A DNA stretch of 64,000 nucleotides from the IMG/VR virus record IMGVR_UViG_3300023174_005338, positions 124,001-188,000 of that record. The stretch is one strand, 5' to 3'. Both the position numbers and the translations under genes were made by a program. This document shows positions 48,178 to 64,000 of this stretch, one piece after another. The notes beneath the pieces were generated by a model, which was not told the DNA's origin, did no database searches, and saw only the letters and a list, made by a program, of their open reading frames with translations. The stretch's first letter is position 1; each line of letters begins with the position of its first letter.

Positions 48178-49017
48178 ATGACAACATTTACCAGTGAAGA
48201 CAGAGAGAACGCAGTGAAAAATAATGCCAGCCAAAAAACATTTGATGCCTTGCAACAAAGCCGTATTGTTGCCGAAGCACCATATCATCCAGGCTATGAA
48301 GATGCTGTAGTAGATCCCGACGAAGGCCGCCCACTGAGCGTGGTTATACGTGACAGCATGCGAGCTTCAGGTAAAAGATTCTGGGCTGGCGACAACATTA
48401 GTGAGTTTATCGAATCAGAGCGAGAACGCGAACAGCTGATTGACGAAGCCACACAAGCATTTGAAACTGTCTTGGACACCTTGTTGATTGATCGTGCGAC
48501 AGATCCCAACAGCCAAGGCACAGCAAGACGCTTGGCAAAAATGTATTTCAATGAAATCATGGCCGGCCGGTATGAACCCAGACCCGATGCCACAGCATTT
48601 CCCAACGATAGCGAGGACAGATATGAAGGAATGTTGGTTGTTAGAAGTGAATTGCGTAGTATGTGTAGTCATCACCATCAGCCTGTATCTGGGGTGGCTT
48701 ACATTGGTATCATTGCTGCCAACAAACTTATTGGCCTTAGCAAGTATACTCGTATTGCTCAGTGGTGCGCTAGGCGTGGTACTCTCCAGGAAGAGCTAGC
48801 CAACGACATTGCCAGAGAGATTGCCCGAGCCACTGACAGCGAAAACATTGGCGTTTATATCCAAGCCACACACGGTTGCTGTGAAAATCGTGGCATCATG
48901 GCACACAGTTCGTTGACTCAGACCACGGTGCTCAAAGGTGCGTTCAAAACTGATCCTGGCACCAAGAAAGAGTTCATGGATAATATCAAACTGCAACAAG
49001 AGTTTGCACCAAGATGA
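48178..49017 (+). CDS. folE: GTP cyclohydrolase I (N-terminally extended)
   Basis: SMCSHHHQP, GLSKYTRI, RRGTLQE, HGCCENRG. Confidence 0.92.
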   Translation: MTTFTSEDRENAVKNNASQKTFDALQQSRIVAEAPYHPGYEDAVVDPDEGRPLSVVIRDSMRASGKRFWAGDNISEFIESEREREQLIDEATQAFETVLDTLLIDRATDPNSQGTARRLAKMYFNEIMAGRYEPRPDATAFPNDSEDRYEGMLVVRSELRSMCSHHHQPVSGVAYIGIIAANKLIGLSKYTRIAQWCARRGTLQEELANDIAREIARATDSENIGVYIQATHGCCENRGIMAHSSLTQTTVLKGAFKTDPGTKKEFMDNIKLQQEFAPR

Positions 49018-49507: not shown

Positions 49508-51949
49508 ATGCGTCGCAAACTGCTGTGGACTTGTCTTTTTGGTACAGTTATTGTCGTCACTGGGTGTGGTGGAGGAGGTGGTGGAGGTGGTGGCTCTCCA
49601 TACAACAGTCCTAACCCTATACTTAGACAAGTTCCGTATTCCACTCCTGTACGAGTTGGATCAGTCACTCCCATAAACAGCACCGCACGAGAATATGACT
49701 CCAGTGCCATGTTTGCTGAAAATCTCAGTGGTACCGGTGAAGAATTAATCACAGCCGGCAGATCTAGTACCAGTAATCAAGGTTCCTATCCCACATCTAA
49801 TCTCAATGTGTTTGGTTGGAGCAACGGCACTTTGGTCAATCGAACCAGTCAGTGGTTCGCCGGCACAGACAACGTGATCTTAGGCACAGAACCCAGTGTT
49901 AAATTTGCTGACTTTGACGGTGATGGTCGCAAAGACATGTATGTGGCACCCAATACTGATGCCAGCTCAACCGGATCCGGGTGGGTATTTTTCAACAACG
50001 GTACCAGGTTTACCCGAGTAGATTTAAATCTCGGCATACATGGCCACGACAGTGCAGTTTATGATATCAACGGAGATGGTCGCAGTGATATTTTTACCAC
50101 TGGTAGTCGTGTGAGCTTTGGCAATGCTGATCGAACTTTCACCACACACGCAGTTTCAGGCGCAAATTATGGCGGCACCGCAGGATCAGTGGCCATAGCA
50201 GACTTCATGGGCACTGGTGGCAGCAGCATCATACTTACTGATCAAAATGCCTGGCAGACAGGAAATAATCGCTTGTATAGTTGGAGCATGGTCGACGGTG
50301 GTAGATCTACACTGGATTTTCGACTGACCATGATCAGTGCCCTGCCGGATTCGAGATTTCTCCTGCCCAAGTGGAGTGGGCATGGATTTGCTGGCAGCCA
50401 CGACTATAGAGCCCTGGCATTTGACTTTGACAATTCAGGTCTGCCCAGTGCTGTGATATTCAGTCGACCCCTTAAAGCCAACGGCACCGGCGGATACACC
50501 TGGCCCGACTACAGTGAAATACAGTTCTTGAAAAACCGCGGTGGTGGCACTTTTGTAGATGTCACTGACTCGACCTTGGTTGGGTATAACACAAACACAT
50601 CTTCACAACACTACAATCCCAAACTCATGGACGTGAACAACGATGGTCTTATTGACATTGTGTTGGGCGGAACCAGTTGGACCAGTGCCACTGGAGCCCA
50701 GGTCTTGATACACACCAAAGAACACAAATACGTGGCCAGTTATAGCACAGTGCTCGACGCTTTTCTTGGTCAGTCGTTGAACTTGGAAAAAGCCATAAAT
50801 GCCAGTGCAGAAACAGGCGCCAATGGCGTTGTTTTTGTGCGTGGGCCAGATGGCAACATGTATCTGGCCACCGCGGTCAGTTATGTCAGTGGCGGTGTGC
50901 AACAAAAAGCCATTTATCTCAGCAAGCTGGGCTCCACGGTTACCAATGCCCAGGCCACTGCCGCGGCAATCAAACAGGCTTGGCCCTGGATGAGTGACGG
51001 CCAGATCAACACAGTGCTGGCACAGAGCTCGACCACATGGTTTGGCATGAATGTGTTGGACCCAGAAAAAGCATTTCAACCAATCGGCAACTTGGGCATA
51101 CCGCTTGCCACCGGTGGCATAGCACCCATACGTGGTTACATCACAGGCCTGAACATTGGTGACGGGTCAGCTGTGGTCACTGACAGCTTGGGTCGTGCAT
51201 TCTCTACCAACATTAAACCCATGAATATCACTGCCATGAATGCGTTTGGATACAATACCGAACACAATGATCAGTATGAACTGACCAGCCATGCCGAATA
51301 TCTAGTCAATGGTACCTTGACCACTGTGGGCAATCTACGCTTTGGCAGTGATTTTGCCGGTAGAGACAACACCGGCCAGGGTCTTAACCGACCTCGACAA
51401 TACACCGTGGGTGTGCCAAGATGGTACAGCAAGGGAAACTGGAGTGCAGGCACACAATATACCTATCTAAATTCCAACCCGTGGATGGCTTTTGGTGGTG
51501 CCTGGGGTGAGATCACCGGAAGTGGCGTCATGGACAATGTGATCACATATCGCCGCGATGGATTCTCAGCACAGGCCAGTGCCATGCATGTGACAACCAA
51601 CATAACTCCGGGTCTGATCACTCGAGTCAACAACATGTGGGGTGCCTGGGCAGAATCCGGATATAGATTTGGTGATGCCAAAAGGTCCGGTGACATGGGC
51701 ATATATGCTGGCATCAAACCTGTGGTATTATCAGGATCAGTTGAAGCCCGAATACCCACAGCCGTTGACATGTCAGGTAATGTAGTATATACTAACAAGA
51801 AGTTAATGGTGCAAAATCAAACCACTGGTTATTTACGAACACTATATACTAATCAATTGGACCGTCGAACTCAGTTGAGACTGAGTGCTGTGAGCACTAC
51901 CGCAGGACAGTATCGGGCCATGACCGAACTTAAATTTTGGATAGACTAA
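49508..51949 (+). CDS. Lipoprotein with FG-GAP/VCBS repeats and probable C-terminal beta-barrel
   Basis: VTG|C lipobox, Gly9 linker, ADFDGDGRKD, DINGDGRSD, DVNNDGLID; amphipathic strands, ends ELKFWID. Confidence 0.7.
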   Translation: MRRKLLWTCLFGTVIVVTGCGGGGGGGGGSPYNSPNPILRQVPYSTPVRVGSVTPINSTAREYDSSAMFAENLSGTGEELITAGRSSTSNQGSYPTSNLNVFGWSNGTLVNRTSQWFAGTDNVILGTEPSVKFADFDGDGRKDMYVAPNTDASSTGSGWVFFNNGTRFTRVDLNLGIHGHDSAVYDINGDGRSDIFTTGSRVSFGNADRTFTTHAVSGANYGGTAGSVAIADFMGTGGSSIILTDQNAWQTGNNRLYSWSMVDGGRSTLDFRLTMISALPDSRFLLPKWSGHGFAGSHDYRALAFDFDNSGLPSAVIFSRPLKANGTGGYTWPDYSEIQFLKNRGGGTFVDVTDSTLVGYNTNTSSQHYNPKLMDVNNDGLIDIVLGGTSWTSATGAQVLIHTKEHKYVASYSTVLDAFLGQSLNLEKAINASAETGANGVVFVRGPDGNMYLATAVSYVSGGVQQKAIYLSKLGSTVTNAQATAAAIKQAWPWMSDGQINTVLAQSSTTWFGMNVLDPEKAFQPIGNLGIPLATGGIAPIRGYITGLNIGDGSAVVTDSLGRAFSTNIKPMNITAMNAFGYNTEHNDQYELTSHAEYLVNGTLTTVGNLRFGSDFAGRDNTGQGLNRPRQYTVGVPRWYSKGNWSAGTQYTYLNSNPWMAFGGAWGEITGSGVMDNVITYRRDGFSAQASAMHVTTNITPGLITRVNNMWGAWAESGYRFGDAKRSGDMGIYAGIKPVVLSGSVEARIPTAVDMSGNVVYTNKKLMVQNQTTGYLRTLYTNQLDRRTQLRLSAVSTTAGQYRAMTELKFWID

Positions 51950-52332: not shown

Positions 52333-53259
52333 ATGACTCTCCCACTACAACCAAATTTGCTGGGGTTACCTCTGGCTCCTGCTCAGTGTGTGATAGATCC
52401 GGCTCTCAAACAACAAGTGTATTCAATCATTGACAGCTCCAGTGATTATCTGGACAGTGATAGTGTGCTGTCTGATTTTCTGAGCACGTATATTCACTGG
52501 ATCAAACAAAGTCAGTTGAATTGTATCACCGGCATTGATAGTTTTGATCAAGTTGATTATTCTCAAGGTACAACAGAATCATTTGATCACTTTTATATTA
52601 AAAATTCTCAAAGAAGATTTCGTTGTTTTCGCGGAGAATATCTGTATCATCAATTGGTTTGGAAGAGCAGTTTTCCAAACTGGAAATTCATAGAAGACGA
52701 GCCGTTGATGTCAAACGATGCTGTAGTTTTAAGTGTGCCGTTTGCTGATACTGGAAACGTGCATGCTGGCATAGACAAAACCTTTCTGGACCAGTGTGCC
52801 TACTTGAAAATTCCAGTGCTGGTAGACATGGCTTTTTTTGGTATCTGTGGAAACATCGATTTTGATTTGGCACACCCGGCAATTTCAGATGTTTGTTTTA
52901 GTTTGAGCAAAACATTTCCTGTTAGCCTTTTACGAATTGGAATGAGACTGTCCCGAGGTAATCAGCAGGACGGGCTTGCTGTTTACAATCAAACACAATA
53001 TGTGAATCGTGCGGGAGCAGGCATAGGATTAAAATTGTTAAAAATACTTTCTGCTGATTGCACTTACTTGCGTTACAGAGACAAGCAAGAGTCATGGTGT
53101 CAACAACATGAACTAGCAACCAGTGACACAGTGATTTTTGGATTGGATTTTGCTCACAAATATGACCGGTACAACCGAGGCAGTGCAGACAGCAATAGAA
53201 TTTGTTTTGCCAGTATGTATCAATATGATTCTTGGCCACAGGCAGTCAAGATTGATTAA
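52333..53259 (+). CDS. Fold-type I PLP-dependent enzyme
   Basis: VLVDMAF, FSLSKTF..LRIG. Confidence 0.65.
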   Translation: MTLPLQPNLLGLPLAPAQCVIDPALKQQVYSIIDSSSDYLDSDSVLSDFLSTYIHWIKQSQLNCITGIDSFDQVDYSQGTTESFDHFYIKNSQRRFRCFRGEYLYHQLVWKSSFPNWKFIEDEPLMSNDAVVLSVPFADTGNVHAGIDKTFLDQCAYLKIPVLVDMAFFGICGNIDFDLAHPAISDVCFSLSKTFPVSLLRIGMRLSRGNQQDGLAVYNQTQYVNRAGAGIGLKLLKILSADCTYLRYRDKQESWCQQHELATSDTVIFGLDFAHKYDRYNRGSADSNRICFASMYQYDSWPQAVKID

Positions 53260-54076
53260 GGCCGGACACGACGACTGGCTTGGTCTCACATTGGATCCTG
53301 GTCAATTTTGTGTGGAAATACTCAAACCTGCTACCGTGGTCAAGTCAAATTTTCATCATGAAGCTGATCGCGCGATTAGATATCTGGCAGATAGATACTG
53401 TGATCGTCCTTTGTATTTGGCACTCAGTGGTGGCATCGACAGTGAGTTTGTTGCCAATCTCTTGCTGAAAAATTCCATACCTTTTAGACCAATCATCTTA
53501 AAAATTGATTCATTCAACAGCCCGGAATCATGGTATGCCGAGTATTGGTGCAAGCAACATGATATTGATCCCATAAGACTGAGTCTCACAACTGATCAAT
53601 ACATCCAGGAAATGAAAAAATACTATCCGTACTTGCTAAAATTACAGAATGCACTTCAAACACCAATGATGTATTTGTATGATTATGTAAATCAGCTCAA
53701 TGGTTATTGTATCTATTCTGCCGGAGACATCAATCTAGATTTAGAAGAAAAAAAATTTTATTGTTACAGTTTGGATTTTATCAGCGATTTACTGAACAAT
53801 GGACACCCCACCAGCTTTTTTATGTACACTCCGGAATTGGCATTGAGCTACGTCTCTGAATTTGATGTTAACATTACGGAACAAGAAAACAAATTAAATT
53901 TTTATAATGTATCGCCTAGACCAAAAATTGATTACATATCTTCTTTACATAGTTGTTCCACGGTGGCAGAGGTTATTGATAAGTTTTGTTACATCTCAAA
54001 ACAACAAATAGCGCCTTACCCGTATTGGTATGGAAAAAAAGAAGAATTGATAAAAAAACTTGTTGGGTCAAACTAA
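53225..54076 (+). CDS. PP-loop (adenine nucleotide alpha hydrolase-like) protein
   Basis: LALSGGIDSE; start uncertain. Confidence 0.6.
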   Translation: MILGHRQSRLIKAGHDDWLGLTLDPGQFCVEILKPATVVKSNFHHEADRAIRYLADRYCDRPLYLALSGGIDSEFVANLLLKNSIPFRPIILKIDSFNSPESWYAEYWCKQHDIDPIRLSLTTDQYIQEMKKYYPYLLKLQNALQTPMMYLYDYVNQLNGYCIYSAGDINLDLEEKKFYCYSLDFISDLLNNGHPTSFFMYTPELALSYVSEFDVNITEQENKLNFYNVSPRPKIDYISSLHSCSTVAEVIDKFCYISKQQIAPYPYWYGKKEELIKKLVGSN

Positions 54077-54167: not shown

Positions 54168-54617
54168 ATGGCAAAGTATCTTTCAACCAAGCACTACGGA
54201 CACAACATTGGGTTGAGTGCTGTATTCCGTCAACCCAATGCTGACCACAGTCACTGTCACTTGCTACATGGTTACAGCCTGGCATTCACATTCACTTTTG
54301 GTTGCGATCAGTTAGATGATAAAAACTGGGCAGTGGACTTTGGTGGACTCAAAGAACTAAAAGCCTGGCTAGAAGATCATTTTGATCACAAGCTGGCCCT
54401 GGATCGTGCAGATCCGCACTTGGACAAGTTTCAAGAACTAGAAACATTGGGTTTAGCTGAGATCAGAATGTTTGATGGGGTAGGCGCTGAAAAGTTTGCC
54501 GAACATGCATTCAATTTTGCAGATCTCTTAATCCGCGAAAAGACCAATGGTCGTTGCTTTTGCGTCAGGGTAGAATGTGCTGAACACGGTGCCAACAGTG
54601 CCATCTACGAAGGATAA
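54168..54617 (+). CDS. queD: 6-carboxy-5,6,7,8-tetrahydropterin synthase
   Basis: HCHLLHGY (CxxxHG), VDFGGLK, FDHKL, EKFA, VECAE. Confidence 0.85.
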   Translation: MAKYLSTKHYGHNIGLSAVFRQPNADHSHCHLLHGYSLAFTFTFGCDQLDDKNWAVDFGGLKELKAWLEDHFDHKLALDRADPHLDKFQELETLGLAEIRMFDGVGAEKFAEHAFNFADLLIREKTNGRCFCVRVECAEHGANSAIYEG

Positions 54618-54659: not shown

Positions 54660-55481
54660 ATGGCAAACGACTATAAAATAGCAATATTACTTCCCACACG
54701 AGGCCGCACCGACGCCTTGACACGCAGTCTAATTGGCCTGTTAGAAAAAGCCACAGATCTAGATTCCATACAAGTGTTGTTGGGCTTGGACACAGATGAC
54801 ACTGTAGGCATCCAGCACTTCCAAGAAGAACTACAACCTAAATTAGACGACATGGGTGTGGATTATACTGCCATGTCTTTTGAGCCCATAGGCTACAGCC
54901 AATTGCATGATTATGTAAACACCCTGGCGCGAGCCAGTTCGGCAGATTGGATGTTTTTCTGGAACGACGATGCTGTCATGGACAGTGAAGCCTGGGATAC
55001 GGAAATTTGCAAGTACACTGGTGAATTTAAATTACTAGCAGTTCATACTCACAATGACCATCCCTACAGTATATTTCCCATAGTGCCCAGAGCCTGGCTG
55101 GATGTGATTGGACATCTCAGTTTGCACAGCATGAACGATGCCTGGCTGAGTCAAAATGCTTACTGTGTGGACATATTTGAGCGAATCAATGTGCATGTCA
55201 CGCATGATCGAGCTGACCTTACTGGCAATAATTTAGATGCCACTTACAAACAACGCGAACTCTTGGAAGGTAATCCCAGCAACCCCAAAGACTTTCATCA
55301 TCCAGAACAGACCTCAAAACGCATGCGTGAGTGTGACAAATTGAATGATTATTTGAAAACCATAGGGCAGAATCCTACCTGGTGGGATGCCGTCAAAACT
55401 CAACAGCAAGATCCCTGGCAACGGCTGAGAGAAAACGACGTCAATAATCAAATGCGTCAATTCCAAATAAAAATGAAATGA
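54660..55481 (+). CDS. GT2-like glycosyltransferase
   Basis: ILLPTRGR, LDTDD, FFWNDD; TATAAATA 54644-54651. Confidence 0.75.
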   Translation: MANDYKIAILLPTRGRTDALTRSLIGLLEKATDLDSIQVLLGLDTDDTVGIQHFQEELQPKLDDMGVDYTAMSFEPIGYSQLHDYVNTLARASSADWMFFWNDDAVMDSEAWDTEICKYTGEFKLLAVHTHNDHPYSIFPIVPRAWLDVIGHLSLHSMNDAWLSQNAYCVDIFERINVHVTHDRADLTGNNLDATYKQRELLEGNPSNPKDFHHPEQTSKRMRECDKLNDYLKTIGQNPTWWDAVKTQQQDPWQRLRENDVNNQMRQFQIKMK

Positions 55482-56428
55482 AAAAAATTGTATATGTCAC
55501 AGGTTGTTTGGGATTCATAGGAGTACACGTCACACGACAATGTCTGGCACGTGGATGGCATGTGATTGGTGTGGACAAAGGTACCTATGCCAGCAATTTT
55601 GATTTCTTAGATGAATTTCAAAAATACGATACATTTAAATTCATACACCGAGATATCAATGACCTTGACCGGTTGTATGATTGCGATTATATCATAAACA
55701 CGGCTGCTGAAACTCATGTAGACAACTCAATCATGAGTTCCGAGATATTCCTGCACAGCAACATCAACGGTGTACACCGTCTGTTAGAACTGATCCGCCA
55801 ACAACCTGTTCAAAAGCAACCAATATTGTTGCATTTTTCAACCGACGAGGTCTATGGAGATATTGATTCGGGCGCACATACCGAAACCGATCTGTTAAAA
55901 CCCAGCAATCCTTATTCAGCATCAAAGGCAGCTGCCGACATGTTGATCCTGGCCTGGGCAAGAACATATGGCATCCGATATGTGATCGTGCGTCCTACCA
56001 ACAATTATGGCATTGGTCAATATGTTGAAAAATTAATTCCCAAGTCGATCAAATATCTCAAAATAGGCAGGAAAATTGACCTGCATGATCGTGGTGAGCC
56101 GCGGAGGACTTGGTTGCATGTCGAAGACACTGCTCGTGCGGCCATGACCGTGATTGATCACGGCAAAGTCAACGAAATCTACAACATTTCAGGCAATGCG
56201 GAAATGCCCAACAAGGAAGTTATCAAGAAGATTTTGCAACACTATCCCGGCAGCGGTGCTGAAGATCGTTGGGAAGATTATATAATTGGCAGTCATCGAC
56301 AAGGCCAAGATGTGCGTTATGCAATCGATGACTCCAAACTCAAAGCCCTGGGATGGCGACCCGTGGCCAACTTTGATCAAGAATTACAAAGAGTTATAGA
56401 GTACTATATGTTAAATTTTATTTGGTGA
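55478..56428 (+). CDS. rmlB: NDP-glucose 4,6-dehydratase (RmlB/RfbB-like)
   Basis: AAETHVDNSI, STDEVYG, NPYSASKA, NNYG, LIPK, RxGQDVRYAID. Confidence 0.85.
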   Translation: MKKIVYVTGCLGFIGVHVTRQCLARGWHVIGVDKGTYASNFDFLDEFQKYDTFKFIHRDINDLDRLYDCDYIINTAAETHVDNSIMSSEIFLHSNINGVHRLLELIRQQPVQKQPILLHFSTDEVYGDIDSGAHTETDLLKPSNPYSASKAAADMLILAWARTYGIRYVIVRPTNNYGIGQYVEKLIPKSIKYLKIGRKIDLHDRGEPRRTWLHVEDTARAAMTVIDHGKVNEIYNISGNAEMPNKEVIKKILQHYPGSGAEDRWEDYIIGSHRQGQDVRYAIDDSKLKALGWRPVANFDQELQRVIEYYMLNFIW

Positions 56429-56431
56429 TCC

Positions 56432-57130
56432 ATGGGAACATATTATAAAGCAGTAGCACAATTTATGGATGCAGTTGATCCCTCTGGTGCCTGGGTTGAG
56501 ATCGGAGTTGACCGTGGCGAAGGCAGCACCAAATTCTTTGCTGACATAGCAAAAACAAAAGGCATTAAGTTTTATGGTGTTGATGCCGATGAAAATCAAA
56601 TTGCTCGAGCTAGAACAGTGTTATCAGCACAAGGACAAGCAATATTAGGAGCCGACGGTCAATTTCGATTGGCCGAAGGACCTTTGCCGGATCACATAGA
56701 ATTAGTGCATGCCTTTGGTGAAAATTTTCTAGAGCAATTCACACGCGACAATCCAGGAAAGAAATTTTCGTTGGTGTACCTTGACAACTTTGACTGGGAC
56801 TACTGGGTTGGCGGTCAAGAAGAATCTTTTGTCCCAGCACAAAAGCAACACTATAGAGATTACATGGGCACCGAAATGACCAACATCAACAGCCAAAAAA
56901 CTCATCTGTTGCAGGCCATGCGACTAATGCCATTGATGACTGAAAACAGTATCATAGTATGTGATGACACCTGGTATCATCCCAACGAAGGAGTGTTCAT
57001 TGGCAAGTGTTCCGCAGTAATTCCTTACTTGTTGTTACAAGGATATGAAGTATTAAACAGCCAAGGCTACAGACAAAACAGTGGTGCTATTTTGGGCAGA
57101 TTTACTAAACGCACAGATTCAGAGAGTTGA
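56432..57130 (+). CDS. SAM-dependent methyltransferase (paralog 1)
   Basis: VEIGVDRGEGS, YLDNFDWD, CDDTW. Confidence 0.7.
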   Translation: MGTYYKAVAQFMDAVDPSGAWVEIGVDRGEGSTKFFADIAKTKGIKFYGVDADENQIARARTVLSAQGQAILGADGQFRLAEGPLPDHIELVHAFGENFLEQFTRDNPGKKFSLVYLDNFDWDYWVGGQEESFVPAQKQHYRDYMGTEMTNINSQKTHLLQAMRLMPLMTENSIIVCDDTWYHPNEGVFIGKCSAVIPYLLLQGYEVLNSQGYRQNSGAILGRFTKRTDSES

Positions 57131-57133
57131 TCA

Positions 57134-57754
57134 ATGGGCACATACTATCGAAATGTAGAAAAATTTATACCTCAAATTGATCCAGGTGTGTGGATTGAAA
57201 TTGGTGTTGATCGCGGCGAGGGCAGTACCAAGTTCTTTGCTGATCTAGCAAAAATACATGCCACAAGATTTTATGCTGTAGACTATGATCAAGATCAAAT
57301 CACCGGGCTCAAAGAAAGATTTGTAGAATTACCCGAGCATGTTCGAGCCATACAAGCCAAGGGCGAAGACTTCTTGGACAACTTTAGAAACCTGGAACCC
57401 ACTGCTCAAGTGAGTTTGGTGTACTTAGACAACTTTGACTGGGACTACTGGGTCAACCGAAAAGCCAAACCTTTTGTGCCAGCTCAAAAAGAACGCTACC
57501 TACAAAAAATGGGAACCGAAATGACCAATCTAAATAGTCAACAAGCTCATTTGAAACAGGCTATCCGGTTAATGCCATTGATGTGCAATAATAGCATTAT
57601 TGTGTGTGACGATACTTGGTACGAACCCGATGAAGGAGTGTTCATTGGCAAGTGTTCCGCGGCTATTCCTTATTTGTTATCCGAAGGTTATCGGCTGTTA
57701 CATAGTGAAGGGCATCGTCACAACAGCGGTGCTATATTAGGCAGATCGAAATGA
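57134..57754 (+). CDS. SAM-dependent methyltransferase (paralog 2)
   Basis: Same motifs as upstream gene. Confidence 0.7.
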   Translation: MGTYYRNVEKFIPQIDPGVWIEIGVDRGEGSTKFFADLAKIHATRFYAVDYDQDQITGLKERFVELPEHVRAIQAKGEDFLDNFRNLEPTAQVSLVYLDNFDWDYWVNRKAKPFVPAQKERYLQKMGTEMTNLNSQQAHLKQAIRLMPLMCNNSIIVCDDTWYEPDEGVFIGKCSAAIPYLLSEGYRLLHSEGHRHNSGAILGRSK

Positions 57755-58485
57755 CAGTTAAAAATTATCTAGTATCAGCTGTGCGGCCAATTCGCAACGG
57801 CTGGCACCTGGAAAACAATCAAGACCTGTACAAGGCCTACGGAGAAATGTACCAAATGAGATTGGCATCATTCCGTAAATTTTGTCAAGAACCATTTGAA
57901 GCTGTGTTATGGACTGAACCTACCAACGACAGTGATACCTATACCGTAGACAACTGGAAAGAAATCAAAACGTTGTGGCACAAAGAACCCTGCAACGTTT
58001 TCTGGGCCGGAGCTGACACATTCATGATTCGACCTACCAGTTTGTTCGGCGATCGCTACCAAGAATACAGATTGTTCAACTACACTGAGCCCAGAAACCA
58101 TAGAGAATTTCGACATCATTTCAATGATGATGTACAATACTATCCGCATACCATGTCACGAGAAATATGGGAGTTAGGCGAGAAATACTGGGCGCAAAGA
58201 GAAACACATCCAGATCGCTTGTGGGGATTTGATCAACTAAGACACAACGCAATGTTTTGGACTCAAGATATTCCTGAGGATGATCGATTACATCCAGAAA
58301 TGAATTACATGTGTCATAACTTAAGAAGCGACAGCCCAGCTGAACTAGAATCTACTAGACTCTGGAATTCTGGAGTGCCATTCGCTGACGCAAACATTTT
58401 GCATTTTTGTGCCAGCCGAGGCAGCCGTCAAGTGGTCAATATGATGAAAGTATTATGTCAAGAACTTGGAGTCACCTATGAATGA
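57751..58485 (+). CDS. Probable nucleotide-diphospho-sugar transferase
   Basis: FWAGADTF (DxD variant), ILHF; sugar-gene context. Confidence 0.45.
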   Translation: MTVKNYLVSAVRPIRNGWHLENNQDLYKAYGEMYQMRLASFRKFCQEPFEAVLWTEPTNDSDTYTVDNWKEIKTLWHKEPCNVFWAGADTFMIRPTSLFGDRYQEYRLFNYTEPRNHREFRHHFNDDVQYYPHTMSREIWELGEKYWAQRETHPDRLWGFDQLRHNAMFWTQDIPEDDRLHPEMNYMCHNLRSDSPAELESTRLWNSGVPFADANILHFCASRGSRQVVNMMKVLCQELGVTYE

Positions 58486-59797
58486 AATTTTAACATTGAT
58501 CAAACAGTATATTGAACAAAAACAATCTGCCAAGACCTGGGTAGCCGGCAAGGACTTTGTCAACTATGCAGGTCCGCATTTCAACTCCGACGAGTACGTG
58601 GCAGCCGCAGAAGCCTTGCTGAATGGCTGGCTGGTCATGGGCAACAAGAGCCTGCGCTTTGAACAAAAGTTTCCCAAGGAATTTGGCAAGACACGCGGAG
58701 TGTTGACCAACAGTGGTAGTTCAGCCAACTTGCTGATGATGACAGCAATGAAGAGCAAGCGCGGACACAACTTTCCACCTGGCACCAAAGTATTGATGCC
58801 CATTGCTGGATTCCCAACCACACTTAATCCAACCTTGCAAAATCAATTTACACCAGTGTTCTGCGACATTGAAATTGATACCTTGAACATTGATCTAGAT
58901 CACGCAGAACAGATACTTGCCGGTGATCCAGACATTAAAATTATAACCTTTGCACATGTGTTGGGTAACCCGCCCAACATGGACCGTGTGATGGAATTAG
59001 TTAATAAACACAATCTAATCCTGTTAGAAGATTGTTGCGATGGATTGGGAACAACTTACGATGGCAAGCCTTTGGGAAGTTTTGGTGAGATGGCATCATG
59101 CAGTTTTTATCCAGCACACCACATGACCATGGGCGAAGGCGGCTTTGTGGCCATGAATGATCCACAGCAAGAAATCATCGTGCGTAGCCTACGTGAATGG
59201 GGACGTGGATGTTATTGTGTAGGGCCCGAGGCCAACAAATTAAAATGTGGCACCTGTGGCAAGCGATTCAATGAGTGGATTCCTGAAATGCCAGATCAGA
59301 TTTTTGATCACAAGTATGTGTATGATGAAATTGGGTATAACTTAAAACCTATTGAACTACAAGCAGCCATGGGCCTTGAACAACTTAAAAAATTGCCAGA
59401 AATCCATGAGCTACGTCAACGCAACTACAATCTGTTGTTTGCTATCTATGAAAAATATGAACAATTCTTCCACTTGCCACGTGCTAGAGACAAAGCCGAT
59501 GTCAGTTGGTTTGCGTTCCCATTGACTATTCGTGCAGATGCTCCGTTCTCACGCATGGATATCGTTGACTATCTTGAAGAAAACTTGATACAGACCCGTC
59601 CATACTTTGCTGGCAACATCATGTTGCAACCTGCGTATAGTCACTTGATGGATCCTGTGGCAGCACGTGACAATTATCCTGTGGCCACATTTACCATGAA
59701 GAATACTTACTTCCATGGATGTAGTCCGGTTATTACACCCGAGCAGATTGCTTACATTGGAGAGAAGGTCGATGGATTTATGAGTTTATACCTATGA
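58478..59797 (+). CDS. rfbH: CDP-4-keto-6-deoxyglucose 3-dehydrase (RfbH/DdhC, E1)
   Basis: SFYPAHHMTMGEGG (His replaces Schiff-base Lys), GRGCYC...CGTC Fe-S Cys, DHKYVYDEIGYNLKP. Confidence 0.9.
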   Translation: MNEILTLIKQYIEQKQSAKTWVAGKDFVNYAGPHFNSDEYVAAAEALLNGWLVMGNKSLRFEQKFPKEFGKTRGVLTNSGSSANLLMMTAMKSKRGHNFPPGTKVLMPIAGFPTTLNPTLQNQFTPVFCDIEIDTLNIDLDHAEQILAGDPDIKIITFAHVLGNPPNMDRVMELVNKHNLILLEDCCDGLGTTYDGKPLGSFGEMASCSFYPAHHMTMGEGGFVAMNDPQQEIIVRSLREWGRGCYCVGPEANKLKCGTCGKRFNEWIPEMPDQIFDHKYVYDEIGYNLKPIELQAAMGLEQLKKLPEIHELRQRNYNLLFAIYEKYEQFFHLPRARDKADVSWFAFPLTIRADAPFSRMDIVDYLEENLIQTRPYFAGNIMLQPAYSHLMDPVAARDNYPVATFTMKNTYFHGCSPVITPEQIAYIGEKVDGFMSLYL

Positions 59798-60960
59798 AAA
59801 GTTTAAGCCAAGTAACCTCCAAAATTGATGGTCAGCCAATGTTCAAGTACCTGGACATGGCCAAGTCTTTGGAGGCCCGAGGCCAACATCTTATTCACAT
59901 GGAGATAGGTGAGCCAGACTTTGACACACCCAAAAATGTCACTTGGGCCGCTGTGCAATCTTTGTCCAACGGAGAAACACACTACGGTAGTAGTTTTGGC
60001 CTACAAGAATTTAGAGAAGCTGTGCAGTTTGCCACAGAACGCAGCCGAGGATTTCGTCCAGATCTAGATCAAGTGTTGATCACTCCGGGTGCCAACATTG
60101 CCATCTACTATGCTGTGTTCTGTTTGGTTGATCCCGGTTTTGAAGTCATTGTTCCAGACCCTGGATTCAGCACATATTACAGCAACATCAAAATGTGTGG
60201 TGCTGTTCCTGTTCGAGTGCCACTCAAAGAAGAAAACGAATTCCGTATGAGCCCGGATGATATCGAAGCGGCCATCACAGACAAGACACGTTTGATCATT
60301 ATCAACAGTCCGCAAAATCCCACAGGCAGTGTGCTTACCACTGACGAAGTCAAACGCATTTATGAAATTGCCAAGAAGCATGACATATACATTTACAGTG
60401 ATGAGATTTATGCACGCATGAACTATGAGCCAATCGGCTTTGCAAGTCCCAGCATTTACGATCATTGCAAAGAACATGTTATCCTCAGCAATGGTTTCAG
60501 TAAAGCATTTGCCATGACAGGCTGGAGATTGGGCACACTGATCGGACCGGCCAATGTCATTGAACGCATGGCGGCATTGTTACAAACCACGTCAAGTTGT
60601 GTCAGTGCGTTTGTTCAGCGTGCCGGCATTGAAGCAATTCGCGGCAGCCAAGAAACAGTCACAAACATGATGGCAGAATATCAGGCACGCAGAGACCTGC
60701 TGGTCGACGGACTCAATCGTGTCAAGGGTTTTAAATGTCTCCGGCCAGGCGGTGCATTTTATGTGTTTCCTAATATCACAGAAACAGGGTTATCAAGTGA
60801 CCAAGTTGTTGAAAAGTTAATGTCTGCTGGAGTAGTAACATTGCCTGGACATTGTTTTGGAAAACATGGTGAGGGCTATATTAGATTGTGTTATGCAACC
60901 AGTCGTGAAAACATTCAAGAAGGTCTGAATAGAATTTACAAAGCATTGGGAACAAAATGA
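59794..60960 (+). CDS. Class I/II PLP aminotransferase (AspAT-like)
   Basis: IGEPDF, NSPQNPTG, SDEIY, GFSKAFAMTGWRLG. Confidence 0.9.
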   Translation: MKSLSQVTSKIDGQPMFKYLDMAKSLEARGQHLIHMEIGEPDFDTPKNVTWAAVQSLSNGETHYGSSFGLQEFREAVQFATERSRGFRPDLDQVLITPGANIAIYYAVFCLVDPGFEVIVPDPGFSTYYSNIKMCGAVPVRVPLKEENEFRMSPDDIEAAITDKTRLIIINSPQNPTGSVLTTDEVKRIYEIAKKHDIYIYSDEIYARMNYEPIGFASPSIYDHCKEHVILSNGFSKAFAMTGWRLGTLIGPANVIERMAALLQTTSSCVSAFVQRAGIEAIRGSQETVTNMMAEYQARRDLLVDGLNRVKGFKCLRPGGAFYVFPNITETGLSSDQVVEKLMSAGVVTLPGHCFGKHGEGYIRLCYATSRENIQEGLNRIYKALGTK

Positions 60961-61964
60961 GAGTATGTGATTGGATCGCCGATTATCTAAAATCAATCGG
61001 AGTTGAACGTGTACACGGCCTAATGGGCGGTGGTGCCAGTGGACTCAATGACGGATTTATCAAACAAGGCATGCCCTACATCTGCTATCATCACGAACAA
61101 GGTGCAGGACATTCTGCCATTGGCGAAAGCAAGTTCACTGGCAAACTGGCCGTAGTAAATCCCACAACAGGCTGTGCAGGTACCAACTGTGCAACATCAG
61201 TTTTAAATGCATGGCAAGACAGTGTACCTGTTTTGTTCTTGTCGGGTAACGTTAGATTGGCAACCTGTAGCGGACACATCAACAAAAAAAACAACATTAA
61301 CATCCGTAAGTATGGTATCCAAGAACATCATGTGGTTGACACCTACAAGACCATGACCAAGTTGAGTTGCTTTGTTGACAATGTACAAGACGTAGCCTAC
61401 ACAATCCAATATGCGGTACACTTGGCAACCGCTGGTCGTCCAGGGCCTGTGTGGATTGACATTCCTGGAGATATTCAAACAGCACAGATGCCCGAGAACT
61501 ATAGAGAGTATGTTGCTACCGCCTTGGTCGACACAGTGTCAGATTATGGTCGTGTAAAACAAGCCATTGCCCGAGCCAAACGTCCCATCGTGTTGGCCGG
61601 CTACGGTATCCGTCAAAGCAACACCGTTGACGACTTTGTCAAATTCATTGAGCATTATCAGATTCCTTATGTCAGTACCTACGGAGCAAGAGATTACACA
61701 GCCAATGATCACAAGTTAAGCATTGGCGCTGTTGGCATCAAAGGAAGCCGTGCAGGCAATTTTGCCATGCAGAATGCAGATCTGTTGCTTGTGCTAGGTA
61801 GCAGTCTTGGATCAAGTGTGATTGGATACGATCCTGCACAGTTTAGTACTGCAAGTTATAAAATTATTGTAGACTTAGACATCAACGAACTAAAAAAAGA
61901 TATTGTCAACATTGATGAAAAATACAATGTCAACTTGGAACAATTTTTCAGGAGCATGCTATGA
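60957..61964 (+). CDS. TPP-dependent enzyme, N-terminal and middle domains (ALS/YerE-like)
   Basis: HHEQGAGH, PTTGCAGTN, GRPGPVWIDIPGDIQ, RAGNFAMQNADL. Confidence 0.85.
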   Translation: MRVCDWIADYLKSIGVERVHGLMGGGASGLNDGFIKQGMPYICYHHEQGAGHSAIGESKFTGKLAVVNPTTGCAGTNCATSVLNAWQDSVPVLFLSGNVRLATCSGHINKKNNINIRKYGIQEHHVVDTYKTMTKLSCFVDNVQDVAYTIQYAVHLATAGRPGPVWIDIPGDIQTAQMPENYREYVATALVDTVSDYGRVKQAIARAKRPIVLAGYGIRQSNTVDDFVKFIEHYQIPYVSTYGARDYTANDHKLSIGAVGIKGSRAGNFAMQNADLLLVLGSSLGSSVIGYDPAQFSTASYKIIVDLDINELKKDIVNIDEKYNVNLEQFFRSML

Positions 61965-62701
61965 ACCGCCAAGCCTGGATAGACAAATGCAATCACTGGA
62001 AAGATATCTGGCCTGTAATGCAGGATCAGTACCGGGCCAACGACAATGATCACTCATTGAATATCTATGCTGTGCTAGATGCTATCAACAAGCACAGTCG
62101 TCCTGAAGAGATTCTCATGGGTGATGCTGGCAGTATCAGCTACGCAGGTCCTGTTGCGCTGAATGCCAAGCCGGGTCAACGTTTTATTTTCAGTCCAGCA
62201 CAGGCAGACATGGGCTGGGCACTGCCTGCCGCAATTGGTGCCAGCATGGCCAGCAGTCAACCTATCATCAGCATCATAGGTGATGGCAGTTTTATGAGCA
62301 ATATCCAAGAACTTGCCACAGTCAAGCAACACGAACTCAATATCAAATTTGTCATACTCAACAACGCAGGTTATTTGAGTATCAAAAATACACAAACAAA
62401 ATATTTCAACGGTCGTGTGCATGGTACCAGCTCAGAAACTGGTCTGTGGTTTCCTGATTTTATGAACGTTGCTTCTGCATTTGGTATGAGCTATGTTGAC
62501 ATGAGGTCGGCATCCGACCTGGACCGGTTTCCAGAAATCCTTGCCATGACAGGGCCTTGCATCATTGATTGCCGTTGCCACACGGATCAAGAAATTCTGC
62601 CAGCCCAGGCATTAAAGGATGGCAAGCAAGCAGGCCTGCACGACATGACTCCATTCATTAGTGACCAAGAACTGGCTCGAGAAATGATTGTTAAAATTTA
62701 A
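61961..62701 (+). CDS. TPP-dependent enzyme, C-terminal TPP-binding domain
   Basis: MGWALPAAIG, GDGSF...NNAGY. Confidence 0.85.
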   Translation: MNRQAWIDKCNHWKDIWPVMQDQYRANDNDHSLNIYAVLDAINKHSRPEEILMGDAGSISYAGPVALNAKPGQRFIFSPAQADMGWALPAAIGASMASSQPIISIIGDGSFMSNIQELATVKQHELNIKFVILNNAGYLSIKNTQTKYFNGRVHGTSSETGLWFPDFMNVASAFGMSYVDMRSASDLDRFPEILAMTGPCIIDCRCHTDQEILPAQALKDGKQAGLHDMTPFISDQELAREMIVKI

Positions 62702-62707
62702 AACACC

Positions 62708-63382
62708 ATGTCATACCAAAAGATTCCTGGATTAGAAAACTTGGTTGAATTAAGAGACAGTTCACGGTACCCAGAATTAAAAAATCTGTGGTGGCCTCAA
62801 TATGATCAGAGCATGTGGAGTTATATGCACAAGCACCGTATCGCGCCAGAATTTTTTGATCAGCTGATGACGCATGTCACTGGCACTGGTGTCGTGGTAC
62901 AAGCTGGTGGCAACTGTGGACAGTATGTACGACAGTTTAGTCAACGATTTGACACTGTGTATACATTTGAACCAGATCCAACAAATTTTTTGTGTTTGAC
63001 TTTGAACTGCGGCGACAATGTGATAAAAACACAGGCCTGTGTAGGCAATGAAAGAAAATTTGTAAACACGAGCAAAGGCCATGATTCGGGCGCAATTCAC
63101 GTAAGCGGCCCAGGTAACTTATACACAGTGATCATTGATGACATGGATCTGCCGGCCTGTGATCTCATACAGTTGGACATTGAAGGTTACGAATATTTTG
63201 CCTTGTTGGGAGCTCGACGTACCATTGAACGATATCATCCTTTGCTCATGTTAGAATGGTGTGCGCCTTGGGCCAAGAGATATGGCGTGAGTTTTGAACA
63301 ATTTGAGAAATTGTTGGGCGATCTCGGCTACCGCCAAATTTTGACCAACATGACTGATTGCATTTACAAATACCAACCATGA
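62708..63382 (+). CDS. FkbM-family methyltransferase
   Basis: QAGGNCG, YTFEP, LDIEGYE..AL.GA. Confidence 0.8.
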   Translation: MSYQKIPGLENLVELRDSSRYPELKNLWWPQYDQSMWSYMHKHRIAPEFFDQLMTHVTGTGVVVQAGGNCGQYVRQFSQRFDTVYTFEPDPTNFLCLTLNCGDNVIKTQACVGNERKFVNTSKGHDSGAIHVSGPGNLYTVIIDDMDLPACDLIQLDIEGYEYFALLGARRTIERYHPLLMLEWCAPWAKRYGVSFEQFEKLLGDLGYRQILTNMTDCIYKYQP

Positions 63383-64000
63383 AAACAGCATTGATTACCG
63401 GAGCCAATGGATTCATTGGTCACTACTTAGTAGAAGAATTCGCCAAAGATCACAGTGTGATCTGCGTGGTACGACCAGGCTCCACCAATATGGAACGGAT
63501 CAATCACTTGCAGGATCGTGTCACTGTGATTGAGCACGACATCAAAAATCCTTGTAGACACTTGCCAGCGGCGGATATTATATTGCATGCTGGTGCCAAC
63601 CCCAGTTCGGCCGACAGCCTAAGTGATCCCACAGCATCTGTCATGGACAATGTGCTGGGTACGTTGAACCTGTTGGAACATGCACGTCATACCGGAGTTG
63701 AAAGATTTGTTTATTATAGCAGTGCCGAAGTGTTTGGTCCCATATCCATTGGACACGACAGTCAACCAACTGATGCCTACAACAGCAACAGTCCTTATGC
63801 GGCTGGCAAAGCCGCCGGAGAAGAACTGTGCCTGGCCTATGCCAATTCGTTCAATGTCCCTGCCAGCATCATACACATCAACAATACCTTTGGGCCACGT
63901 TGCCAAAGCAATCGCTTGCCGGTGATCATTGTACGCAAATTACTCAACAATGAAACCTTGGACATACACGTGGGTCCCAGCCAATTGATTGGTGGCCGCC
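63379..64000 (+). CDS. NAD-dependent epimerase/dehydratase (runs off window end; not in ORF track)
   Basis: MKTALITGANGFIG, NVLGT, YSSAEVFG, YAAGK, NTFGP. Confidence 0.85.
   Translation, partial: MKTALITGANGFIGHYLVEEFAKDHSVICVVRPGSTNMERINHLQDRVTVIEHDIKNPCRHLPAADIILHAGANPSSADSLSDPTASVMDNVLGTLNLLEHARHTGVERFVYYSSAEVFGPISIGHDSQPTDAYNSNSPYAAGKAAGEELCLAYANSFNVPASIIHINNTFGPRCQSNRLPVIIVRKLLNNETLDIHVGPSQLIGGR

What the first reader, a model, noticed from the sequence alone, without database searches (positions are those of the whole stretch)
54660..64000. Phage pathway for a branched 3,6-dideoxy sugar
A 4,6-dehydratase, RfbH/E1 (His-for-Lys, Fe-S Cys) and a TPP enzyme match the established yersiniose route, where YerE adds a two-carbon branch from pyruvate to the CDP-3,6-dideoxy-4-keto sugar. 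An epimerase/reductase, aminotransferase, three methyltransferases and two transferases accompany them. The target is unknown: virion glycans, host LPS conversion or DNA. The E3 reductase and NDP-glucose synthase are not in the window.
Basis: partly seen in the sequence, partly recalled or inferred. Interest (0 to 1): 0.6.

Follow-up and report, generated by a model that had tools for sequence, protein, structure and literature searches.

The report
Phage branched-sugar pathway, split YerE enzyme
A 337-kb uncultured jumbo phage carries a tightly packed operon for a branched 3,6-dideoxy sugar; its key carbon-carbon-bond enzyme is a YerE-type thiamine enzyme split into two conserved subunits, and the same cassette occurs in at least 80 other viral contigs.

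Summary
The genes are there, as one overlapping + strand operon (54660 to past the window end). An RmlB-type 4,6-dehydratase, a true E1/RfbH 3-dehydratase (His for Lys, Fe-S cysteines) and a thiamine enzyme are linked in 79 of 80 related viral loci. The thiamine enzyme is not an acetolactate synthase. It sits in a clade apart from E. coli IlvB/IlvI/Gcl (support 100), and its best solved relatives are the YerE-like enzymes JanthE and PpYerE.

Four points need correcting or adding:
- The enzyme is split into two genes (335 + 246 aa) with an ATGA overlap and an internal ribosome-binding site. The split is kept in 75 of 80 loci under strong purifying selection.
- The dehydratase is the dTDP type, not the CDP type.
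- The aminotransferase is a class I amino-acid enzyme. It occupies the slot where bacterial relatives carry aldolases or PanB-like enzymes that make 2-oxoacids, so it probably supplies the branch donor. The branch need not be the two-carbon yersiniose branch.
- No NDP-glucose synthase, E3 reductase, lipid-carrier glycosyltransferase or flippase was detected anywhere in the complete phage genome.

The acceptor of the sugar remains unknown. I found no paper on a phage YerE-like enzyme, and no cultured-phage record holds one.

The parts
54660..55481 (+). GT2-like soluble glycosyltransferase (273 aa)
   Evidence: phrog_14945 glycosyltransferase, E 7e-8. Atlas nearest named cluster is Glycos_transf_2, score 0.99, 232 shared features. 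No Pfam hit. No transmembrane segment. Present in 8 of 80 related loci.
55478..56428 (+). RmlB-type NDP-glucose 4,6-dehydratase (316 aa)
   Evidence: TIGR01181 307 bits (cut-off 365), against CDP-type TIGR02622 at 72 bits. The ten best PDB matches are all dTDP-glucose 4,6-dehydratases; the best is 2hun at 243 bits. STDEVYG and YSASK catalytic motifs are present. A homologue is present in 69 of 80 loci.
56432..57130 (+). Putative SAM methyltransferase, tandem paralogue a (232 aa)
   Evidence: Methyltransf_24 at 25.0 bits, just under the 26.3 cut-off. 63% identical to the next gene. Found in only 2 of 80 loci. This is a weak call.
57134..57754 (+). Putative SAM methyltransferase, tandem paralogue b (206 aa)
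   Evidence: Methyltransf_24 at 27.4 bits, cut-off 26.3. No sequence match in the PDB.
57751..58485 (+). GT-A fold, GT8-like glycosyltransferase (244 aa)
   Evidence: No Pfam, NCBIfam or PHROG hit. AlphaFold2 model pLDDT 82.7, pTM 0.85. Foldseek matches glycogenin, LgtC and the PBCV-1 capsid glycosyltransferase at E about 1e-5, TM 0.5-0.65. Present in 35 of 80 loci, next to the dehydratase or E1.
58478..59797 (+). E1/RfbH-type PMP- and Fe-S-dependent NDP-4-keto-6-deoxyhexose 3-dehydratase
   Evidence: NF011936 436 bits, above the 423 cut-off. PDB 3bcx E1, 1e-98. YPAHH aligns with wild-type H220 (K in the H220K mutant 3bb8). His is conserved in 60 of 60 unique viral copies, and Cys191/249/251/264 in 53 of 60. 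Present in 79 of 80 loci. The ORF opens at TTG 58466; ATG 58478 is the likelier start.
59794..60960 (+). Class I (AspAT/aromatic type) amino-acid aminotransferase, proposed supplier of the 2-oxoacid donor
   Evidence: PF00155 243 bits. Best PDB matches are the P. horikoshii AspAT/aromatic aminotransferases 1gd9 and 1dju at 288 bits. The SKAFAMTGWR lysine motif and NPTG are present. It lies between E1 and the thiamine enzyme in 42 of 80 viral loci and in the Scalindua locus L092, whose copy is 56-58% identical.
60957..61964 (+). YerE-like thiamine enzyme, subunit 1: PYR (N) plus middle domain, 335 aa
   Evidence: TPP_enzyme_N and TPP_enzyme_M. The catalytic Glu in HHEQGAGH is present. PDB JanthE 8rph 7e-44, PpYerE 5ahk 6e-37. 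dN/dS 0.04-0.06.
61961..62701 (+). YerE-like thiamine enzyme, subunit 2: PP (C) domain, 246 aa
   Evidence: TPP_enzyme_C 110 bits. GDGSF...NN thiamine-diphosphate/Mg motif. JanthE 7e-33, next best 2e-18. AGGAG lies 6 bases before the ATG, and ATGA overlaps the stop of subunit 1. The split is kept in 75 of 80 loci. Predicted complex score 0.91 against 0.00 for the controls.
62708..63382 (+). FkbM-family methyltransferase (224 aa)
   Evidence: PF05050 46 bits, TIGR01444 48 bits, phrog_8156. Found in 31 of 80 loci; in other loci a 263-aa short SDR takes this position instead.
63379..64000 (+). Extended SDR, candidate YerF-like ketoreductase or epimerase. The gene continues to 64317, outside the window.
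   Evidence: Epimerase 132 bits (L001:1358-2317). It has SSAEVFG and YAAGK, so the dehydratase Asp is missing. An SDR follows the thiamine enzyme in most loci.

Best explanation
This is a phage-encoded, translationally coupled operon that turns a host NDP-glucose into a C-4 acyl-branched 3,6-dideoxyhexose and transfers it to an acceptor that is still unknown.

**Proposed steps**
1. The RmlB-type enzyme makes NDP-4-keto-6-deoxyglucose. The precursor is probably host dTDP-glucose, because the phage has no NDP-sugar synthase.
2. The E1-type PMP/[2Fe-2S] dehydratase removes the 3-OH. The electrons must come from a host reductase, because the phage has no E3.
3. A two-subunit YerE-like thiamine enzyme (335-aa PYR+middle subunit, 246-aa PP subunit) decarboxylates a 2-oxoacid and adds the acyl group to the C-4 ketone.
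4. The adjacent class I aminotransferase makes that 2-oxoacid from an amino acid. The branch may therefore be longer or more functionalised than the acetyl branch of yersiniose.
5. The downstream SDR reduces a ketone. The FkbM enzyme, and possibly the two Methyltransf_24 enzymes, methylate.
6. The soluble GT2-like and GT8-like transferases attach the sugar.

**Shown here:** gene identities, catalytic motifs, conservation of the cassette and of the split, and separation from acetolactate synthases.

**Inferred:** the nucleotide carrier, the donor, the order of the late steps and the acceptor.
For: **Gene calls and motifs:**

**Cassette conservation:** E1 and both thiamine-enzyme halves are adjacent in 79 of 80 IMG/VR loci, at 58-96% identity.

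**The split is real**
- It is kept in 75 of 80 loci, with an ATGA overlap in most of them (the overlap or spacing differs by a few bases in some) and a GGAG-like site.
- dN/dS is 0.04-0.09 for both halves.
- Complex model score is 0.91, best of 3 controls 0.00. That mark was reached by 51 of 78 solved complexes and 2 of 108 mismatched pairs. The runs agree in at least 98% of contacts, and the partner's pLDDT is at least 86.

**YerE-like, not ALS**
- A profile of the fused relatives scores JanthE at 428 bits, PpYerE 313, E. coli ALS I 285 and plant AHAS 254.
- In the IQ-TREE tree, the phage enzymes plus the fused relatives form a clade with SH-aLRT 100, on a 0.73 branch away from E. coli IlvB/IlvI/Gcl.
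- NCBIfam ALS models score 172 and 100 bits against a 538 cut-off.
- There is no KARI in the genome.

**The same cassette occurs in bacteria:** the Candidatus Scalindua locus L092 reads NTP-transferase, dehydratase, E1, class I aminotransferase, fused thiamine enzyme, SDR.

**The donor-supply slot:** relatives carry, next to the thiamine enzyme, a KDPG-type aldolase (L094), an HMGL-like aldolase (L095), HpcH plus DmpF/DmpG-like enzymes (L097), HpcH (the P0135 place) or a PanB-like enzyme (L098, L091). This matches the published ErwE/ErwI/ErwJ logic (PMC9306805).

**Dependence on the host:** no NTP_transferase and no Fer2 domain in the complete genome, and no NTP-transferase in any of the 80 viral loci.
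Against: - No biochemistry exists for any member of the phage clade.
- I could not put the named YerE, ErwE, JanthE or PpYerE sequences into the tree. Their sequences were available only as printed alignments. Placement therefore rests on PDB scores and on gene context.
- PpYerE scores only slightly above E. coli ALS I.
- The dehydratase is below the TIGR01181 cut-off, and E1's closest solved relative uses a CDP sugar. The carrier nucleotide is open.
- The aminotransferase is missing from about half of the viral loci, so it is accessory.
- The complex model may score high simply because fused enzymes of this fold have been solved.
- Of the 9 relatives' contexts that could be read (10 looked up), 3 had no E1 within reach (L091, L095, the P0143 place), as did the Parcubacteria locus L082. 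One further place (L096) was too short to tell.
Confidence: 0.7

Rival explanations
1. It is the literal yersiniose A route. CDP-glucose is the precursor and pyruvate is the donor. A two-carbon acetyl branch is reduced to 1-hydroxyethyl. The aminotransferase is only a metabolic helper or is unrelated.
For: E1 is 40% identical to the Yersinia CDP-specific E1. YerE-like enzymes such as YpYerE prefer pyruvate (PMC12247030). About half of the viral loci lack the aminotransferase yet keep E1, both thiamine-enzyme halves and the SDR. An SDR follows the thiamine enzyme, as YerF follows YerE.
Against: The dehydratase is RmlB type (307 bits against 72 for the CDP type), whereas the bacterial relatives carry 350-361-aa dehydratases beside 257-260-aa NTP-transferases. 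The aminotransferase sits exactly where relatives have enzymes that make donors, and it is 56-58% identical between Scalindua and the phages. That argues for a role in the pathway.
Confidence: 0.2
2. The aminotransferase acts on the sugar itself. It converts the ketone of the newly added acyl branch, or the C-4 ketone, into an amine, giving an amino-branched sugar.
For: The literature notes that acetyl branches can be further modified by transaminases (PMC9306805). The gene lies between E1 and the thiamine enzyme.
Against: It is an AspAT/aromatic-type class I enzyme with the motifs of amino-acid aminotransferases. To my knowledge, the known NDP-sugar aminotransferases belong to the DegT family. 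Relatives have aldolases or PanB-like enzymes in the same slot, and these cannot aminate.
Confidence: 0.1
3. The thiamine enzyme is a true acetolactate synthase and, with the aminotransferase, forms an auxiliary module for branched-chain amino-acid synthesis.
For: Source annotations call it acetolactate synthase large subunit. NCBIfam ALS models are the top hits by name.
Against: All ALS models score far below their cut-offs. The clade is separated from IlvB/IlvI with support 100. The best solved relatives are YerE-like. It is always next to E1. No KARI is present. The aminotransferase is class I, not the IlvE type.
Confidence: 0.02
4. The two thiamine-enzyme ORFs are a frameshifted pseudogene or an assembly error, not a real two-subunit enzyme.
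For: The two ORFs overlap by 4 bases and together equal one normal enzyme. Five related loci carry a fused gene.
Against: The same junction is found in 75 of 80 independent contigs, down to 58% identity, with a ribosome-binding site and a start codon. Both halves are under strong purifying selection. Hundreds of metagenomic proteins of 335-342 aa end at the same place.
Confidence: 0.02

Closest known systems
Yersiniose A pathway of Yersinia pseudotuberculosis (DdhA-D, YerE, YerF)
   Same: The chemistry follows the same logic: 4,6-dehydration, E1-type 3-deoxygenation, thiamine-dependent acyl addition at the C-4 ketone, then an SDR.
   Different: There is no DdhA or DdhD/E3 in the phage. The dehydratase is RmlB type rather than DdhB type. 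The thiamine enzyme is split into two subunits. A class I aminotransferase, methyltransferases and viral GT-A transferases are added. The carrier nucleotide and the branch length are unknown.
Erwiniose-type clusters (ErwE with ErwI/ErwJ; PMC9306805) and their uncultured relatives (L094, L095, L097)
   Same: A YerE-like enzyme lies beside an enzyme that makes its special 2-oxoacid donor.
   Different: In the phage the neighbouring enzyme is an aminotransferase, not an aldolase. The donor would therefore come from an amino acid.
JanthE (PDB 8rph) and PpYerE (5ahk), solved YerE-like ketone-accepting carboligases
   Same: These are the best and second-best solved matches over all three domains. 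The catalytic Glu and the cofactor motif are conserved.
   Different: Both are single chains of about 590-620 aa. JanthE has a CDG motif where the phage enzyme has the canonical GDG (PMC12188165). The physiological roles of JanthE and PpYerE are not defined.
Candidatus Scalindua cluster (MBT6231165.1, locus L092)
   Same: It has the same ordered core: E1, class I aminotransferase, thiamine enzyme, SDR. The aminotransferase is 56% identical to the window's copy.
   Different: It is bacterial. The thiamine enzyme is fused. It has its own NTP-transferase and a 361-aa dehydratase, and it lies beside rml genes and an ABC transporter.
Split thiamine enzymes of other superfamilies (for example ComD/ComE sulfopyruvate decarboxylase, from my own knowledge; split-gene transketolases, PMC12247030)
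   Same: The PYR and PP domains are on separate polypeptides.
   Different: Here the cut lies between the middle and PP domains of an ALS/YerE-type three-domain enzyme. It arose inside a viral clade whose nearest relatives are fused.

Membership tests
YerE-like thiamine-dependent lyases (decarboxylase superfamily) | PYR, middle and PP domains with the catalytic Glu and the GDG...NN cofactor motif | tested here: met
   All three Pfam domains are present, spread over two ORFs. HHEQGAGH and GDGSF...NN are present.
YerE-like thiamine-dependent lyases (decarboxylase superfamily) | Closer to characterised YerE-like enzymes than to acetohydroxyacid synthases | tested here: met
   JanthE 428 and PpYerE 313 bits, against ALS I 285 and plant AHAS 254. 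The clade is apart from E. coli IlvB/IlvI/Gcl with support 100. The named YerE sequences could not be put into the tree.
YerE-like thiamine-dependent lyases (decarboxylase superfamily) | Encoded with genes that make an NDP-4-keto-3,6-dideoxyhexose | tested here: met
   E1 is adjacent in 79 of 80 viral loci and in 6 of the 9 relatives' contexts that could be read.
YerE-like thiamine-dependent lyases (decarboxylase superfamily) | Carboligation of a 2-oxoacid-derived acyl group to a ketone acceptor | not testable with these tools
   This needs an enzyme assay.
E1 / RfbH (CDP-6-deoxy-L-threo-D-glycero-4-hexulose 3-dehydrase) | Family model above the curated cut-off | tested here: met
   NF011936 436 bits, cut-off 423.
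E1 / RfbH (CDP-6-deoxy-L-threo-D-glycero-4-hexulose 3-dehydrase) | His in place of the PLP lysine, and the Fe-S cysteine set | tested here: met
   The alignment to 3bcx and 3bb8 shows YPAHH against the mutant's YPAKH, and CC...CYC...C. These are conserved in the viral family.
E1 / RfbH (CDP-6-deoxy-L-threo-D-glycero-4-hexulose 3-dehydrase) | A dedicated E3 (AscD/DdhD) reductase partner encoded alongside | tested here: not met
   There is no Fer2 domain anywhere in the complete genome. A host reductase must serve instead, as reported for SpnQ (my own knowledge).
dTDP-glucose 4,6-dehydratase (RmlB) | Equivalog model above the cut-off | tested here: inconclusive
   TIGR01181 scores 307 bits, below the 365 cut-off, but far above the CDP-type model at 72 bits.
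dTDP-glucose 4,6-dehydratase (RmlB) | Catalytic Thr-Asp-Glu and Tyr-x-x-x-Lys | tested here: met
   STDEVYG and YSASK are present. All the best PDB hits are dTDP-glucose dehydratases.
Acetolactate / acetohydroxyacid synthase | Equivalog score, a regulatory subunit and a pathway partner (KARI) | tested here: not met
   TIGR00118 scores 172 and 100 bits against a cut-off of 538. No KARI is in the genome. No small-subunit gene is among the cassette's neighbours.
Yersiniose gene set (ddhA, ddhB, ddhC, ddhD, yerE, yerF) | All six functions encoded together | tested here: not met
   Equivalents of ddhA and ddhD are absent from the genome. ddhB is replaced by an RmlB type. ddhC-like and yerE-like genes are present. 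A yerF-like role is only a candidate for the SDR.

The most novel reading that the evidence does not exclude
Abundant uncultured phages (this jumbo phage and many T4-like phages) make a sugar not yet described: a 3,6-dideoxyhexose with a C-4 side chain derived from an amino acid. The side chain would be built by an aminotransferase feeding a phage-specific two-subunit YerE-like enzyme. Soluble GT-A transferases would then use the sugar to decorate the phage's own virion proteins rather than host LPS.
Probability: 0.25. Interest if true: 0.8.

Novelty: new variant of a known kind. Interest (0 to 1): 0.62.

Why it matters
YerE-like enzymes are known only from bacterial cell-surface glycans. A 2025 review names viruses as unexplored territory for them (PMC12247030). 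Four things would follow from this finding:

- It moves acyl-branched deoxysugar synthesis into phages, in at least 80 viral contigs and hundreds of metagenomic proteins.
- It gives a natural two-subunit form of an enzyme class that is used as a biocatalyst for chiral tertiary alcohols.
- It suggests a new way of supplying donors, through an aminotransferase.
- It points to an unusual phage glycan that could affect adsorption, immunity or recognition.

It also corrects a widespread database label, 'acetolactate synthase large subunit', for this family.

Tried and rejected
- **Genome-contig scan** with the N-half alignment gave one hit only, a Parcubacteria MAG with a fused gene at 38% identity and no E1 nearby. 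It was no route to the named YerE genomes.
Proteobacterial YerE, ErwE and JanthE sequences could not be fetched, and I did not type them from memory. No tree with named YerE enzymes was made.
- **The listing of cluster members** gave only generic names.
- **The search for homologous proteins** with the 335-aa half returned only split, close relatives among the 120 listed hits. The fused relatives came from the full HMMER search.
- **Phage collection:** no DNA match. No thiamine-enzyme match above 32% identity. E1 reaches 39-42% identity in cyanophages and others.
- **PDB sequence searches** for the Methyltransf_24 and FkbM genes gave nothing useful.
There are therefore no habitat, expression or read-level data, and read laying was not used.
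- **Promoter and terminator scans** found no more than shuffled sequence gives.
- **DNA as target:** no TGT/DpdA was found, and nothing links the glycosyltransferases to DNA. I consider it unlikely, but it is not excluded.
- **LPS as target:** no priming transferase or Wzx was found. This does not exclude use of host machinery.

Full report
**Setting.** The window is bases 124001-188000 of a single 337,119-bp IMG/VR virus record. The record has direct terminal repeats and a CheckV completeness of 100%. Its family-B DNA polymerase is closest to those of jumbo myoviruses: Sinorhizobium phage Phosso 50%, Agrobacterium phage Atu_ph07 46%, and the 121Q/Rak2-like phages 42%. G+C in the region (0.43-0.46) matches the rest of the window. 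I read 20 kb beyond the window end as L001.

**Observation.** From 54660 to 64317 eleven + strand ORFs follow one another, most overlapping by 4 bases or separated by 3-7 bases. They are:
- a GT2-like transferase;
- an RmlB-type 4,6-dehydratase with STDEVYG and YSASK;
- two tandem Methyltransf_24 paralogues, which are weak calls at the Pfam threshold;
- a 244-aa protein with no family hit, whose model (pLDDT 82.7) has a GT-A/GT8-like fold like glycogenin, LgtC and the PBCV-1 capsid glycosyltransferase;
- an E1/RfbH 3-dehydratase;
- a class I aminotransferase;
- the thiamine enzyme, in two ORFs;
- an FkbM methyltransferase;
- an extended SDR that lacks the dehydratase Asp (SSAEVFG).

**E1.** The protein passes the curated RfbH model (436 bits against a 423 cut-off) and matches the Yersinia E1 structure at 1e-98. 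Its YPAHH aligns with wild-type E1; the H220K mutant structure has K at the first H. The CC, CYC and C cysteines align as well. Among 60 unique viral copies the His is invariant, and the four cysteines are present in 53. The other seven are second, ColD-like copies in loci that hold two E1 genes. The complete genome has no Fer2 domain (so no E3) and no NTP_transferase. None of the 80 related viral loci has an NDP-glucose synthase either. The phage must therefore draw NDP-glucose and electrons from its host. From my own knowledge, the E1 homologue SpnQ works with general cellular reductases, so this is feasible.

**The thiamine enzyme is a conserved two-subunit enzyme.**
- ORF 60957-61964 holds the PYR and middle domains, with the catalytic Glu.
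- ORF 61961-62701 holds the PP domain, with GDGSF...NN.
- The junction reads AGGAG, six bases, then ATG. The ATGA overlaps the upstream stop.
- A scan of IMG/VR gave 101 relatives, of which 80 were kept, at 58-96% identity. In 75 of these the gene is split at the same point, with the same ATGA overlap in most of them (the overlap or spacing differs by a few bases in some) and a GGAG-like site. In 5 it is one ORF.
- dN/dS is 0.04-0.09 for both halves, like the neighbouring genes.
- The word search found hundreds of 335-342-aa proteins that end at the same place.
- A complex model of the two halves scored 0.91, with the best of 3 controls at 0.00. That mark was reached by 51 of 78 solved complexes and 2 of 108 mismatched pairs. 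The runs agree in at least 98% of contacts, and the partner's pLDDT is at least 86. Fused enzymes of this fold have been solved, so the pass shows likeness to a normal thiamine enzyme rather than proving binding.
- In the tree, the nearest relatives outside the phage clade are all fused (P0125, P0171/P0181, P0169, P0129). The fused viral genes L064 and L065 are nested among the split ones (SH-aLRT 88-90). This suggests one split followed by at least one re-fusion.

**It is YerE-like, not an acetolactate synthase.**
- All NCBIfam ALS models score far below their cut-offs.
- Each half has JanthE (8rph) as its best solved match (7e-44 and 7e-33); PpYerE (5ahk) comes second for the N-terminal half. 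JanthE is described as a YerE-like ketone-accepting enzyme (PMC12188165).
- A profile of the fused relatives scores JanthE at 428 bits, PpYerE 313, E. coli ALS I 285 and plant AHAS 254.
- The full HMMER search returned 150 fused proteins of about 600 aa. With the phage enzymes they form a clade apart from E. coli IlvB, IlvI and Gcl, with support 100 in both FastTree and IQ-TREE.
- The genome has no KARI.
- Gene context agrees. E1 is adjacent in 79 of 80 viral loci, and E1 lies in the cluster in six of the nine relatives' contexts that could be read, out of ten looked up.
- One relative, L097, has the published erwiniose architecture: a thiamine enzyme with DmpF/DmpG-like dehydrogenase and aldolase (PMC9306805).
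- One limit remains. I could not place the named YerE, ErwE or JanthE sequences in the tree.

**The aminotransferase.** It is an AspAT/aromatic-type class I enzyme: best PDB matches 1gd9 and 1dju at 288 bits, with the SKAFAMTGWR lysine motif and NPTG. At the position of Lys109 of Thermus AspAT (the role of that residue is my own knowledge) it has Asn, as the Pyrococcus enzyme does. This is only a lead against strict specificity for Asp or Glu.

It lies between E1 and the thiamine enzyme in 42 of 80 viral loci. It holds the same place in a Candidatus Scalindua locus, whose copy is 56-58% identical. In other relatives the gene next to the thiamine enzyme is a KDPG-type aldolase, an HMGL-like aldolase, an HpcH aldolase or a PanB-like enzyme. 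All of these make 2-oxoacids. The literature shows that ErwE uses a donor made by its neighbours ErwI and ErwJ, and that it rejects pyruvate. I therefore infer that the aminotransferase makes the donor 2-oxoacid from an amino acid. Because half of the viral loci lack it, it is accessory. Pyruvate or a host-made oxoacid may serve in those loci.

**Carrier nucleotide.** The bacterial relatives carry a 257-260-aa NTP-transferase and a 350-361-aa dehydratase, the usual sizes for the CDP route. The phage and the virus-like locus L093 carry an RmlB-type enzyme of 316-326 aa. A switch to the widespread host dTDP-glucose pool is a reasonable inference, but it is untested.

**Target.** None of the cluster proteins, the three transferases included, has a clear transmembrane segment; the single hydrophobic stretch flagged in the aminotransferase lies inside a soluble fold. 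The genome has no Bac_transf, no WecA-type transferase and no Wzx. The GT8-like protein resembles enzymes that glycosylate proteins, including a viral capsid glycosyltransferase. This leans towards a cytoplasmic acceptor such as virion proteins, but LPS modification through host machinery is not excluded. DNA is unlikely: no TGT/DpdA was found, although preQ0-type genes flank the operon.

**Distribution and novelty.** Other loci that carry the cassette have T4-type clamp, clamp-loader and RegA genes. The cassette therefore occurs in T4-like phages as well as in this jumbo phage. No record in the cultured-phage collection has a close thiamine-enzyme homologue. I found no paper on phage YerE-like enzymes. 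A 2025 review lists viruses as unexplored for this enzyme class.

**Verdict.** This is a new variant of a known kind of pathway. It has a conserved split enzyme, a probable new way of supplying the donor, and an unknown product and acceptor.

Noticed in passing
window 48178-49017, 53138-54076, 54168-54617; L001:3071-3946 (window-equivalent 65071-65946): GTP cyclohydrolase I, an Asn-synthase/QueC-like ATPase, a QueD/PTPS-like protein and a weak radical-SAM-like ORF flank the sugar operon. This looks like a preQ0 / 7-deazaguanine set. No TGT/DpdA was found in the genome by Pfam.
   Followed up: partly
window 45309-48126: A second small sugar module lies upstream: a GT1-like protein (413 aa), an SDR epimerase/dehydratase (315 aa) and a half-length DegT-type ORF (211 aa) that may be truncated or split. 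In loci L007, L008 and L058 the GT1-like gene and an SDR lie directly upstream of the cassette.
   Followed up: no
window 49508-51949: An 813-aa FG-GAP repeat protein has an N-terminal hydrophobic segment that looks like a signal peptide. It also has a sub-threshold match to TcdB_toxin_midN (20 bits, cut-off 24.8), which probably reflects repeat similarity only.
   Followed up: no
L001:11282-12403 (genome 197282-198403): The phage encodes a Gram-negative porin (Porin_4, 127 bits). It may give a clue to the host.
   Followed up: no
L001:2353-6224 (window-equivalent 64353-68224): Directly downstream lie a phosphoribosyltransferase, an NAD-synthase-family ATPase and a UDP-glucose/GDP-mannose-dehydrogenase-like gene. 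The NadE-like gene accompanies the cassette in 27 of 80 viral loci, often together with a small MCD-like ORF.
   Followed up: no
L064, L065, L068, L069, L070: Five viral loci carry the thiamine enzyme as one fused ORF with a linker of about 17 aa. In the tree the two of them that were included (L064, L065) are nested among the split forms, which suggests re-fusion.
   Followed up: partly
L051, L056, L065, L066, L069, L071: Some viral loci hold a second E1-like gene that keeps the His but lacks the Fe-S cysteines, so it is ColD-like. It lies next to two SDRs and a GT10 fucosyltransferase-like gene, which suggests a second deoxysugar route.
   Followed up: no
L091, L098: A PanB-like (ketopantoate hydroxymethyltransferase family) gene directly follows the fused YerE-like gene in one virus-like contig and one bacterial contig. 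This hints at a hydroxymethylated oxoacid donor.
   Followed up: no
genome 220846-222397 (outside the window): A further pair, one SDR-like and one DegT-like, gives weak tblastn matches elsewhere in the phage genome.
   Followed up: no
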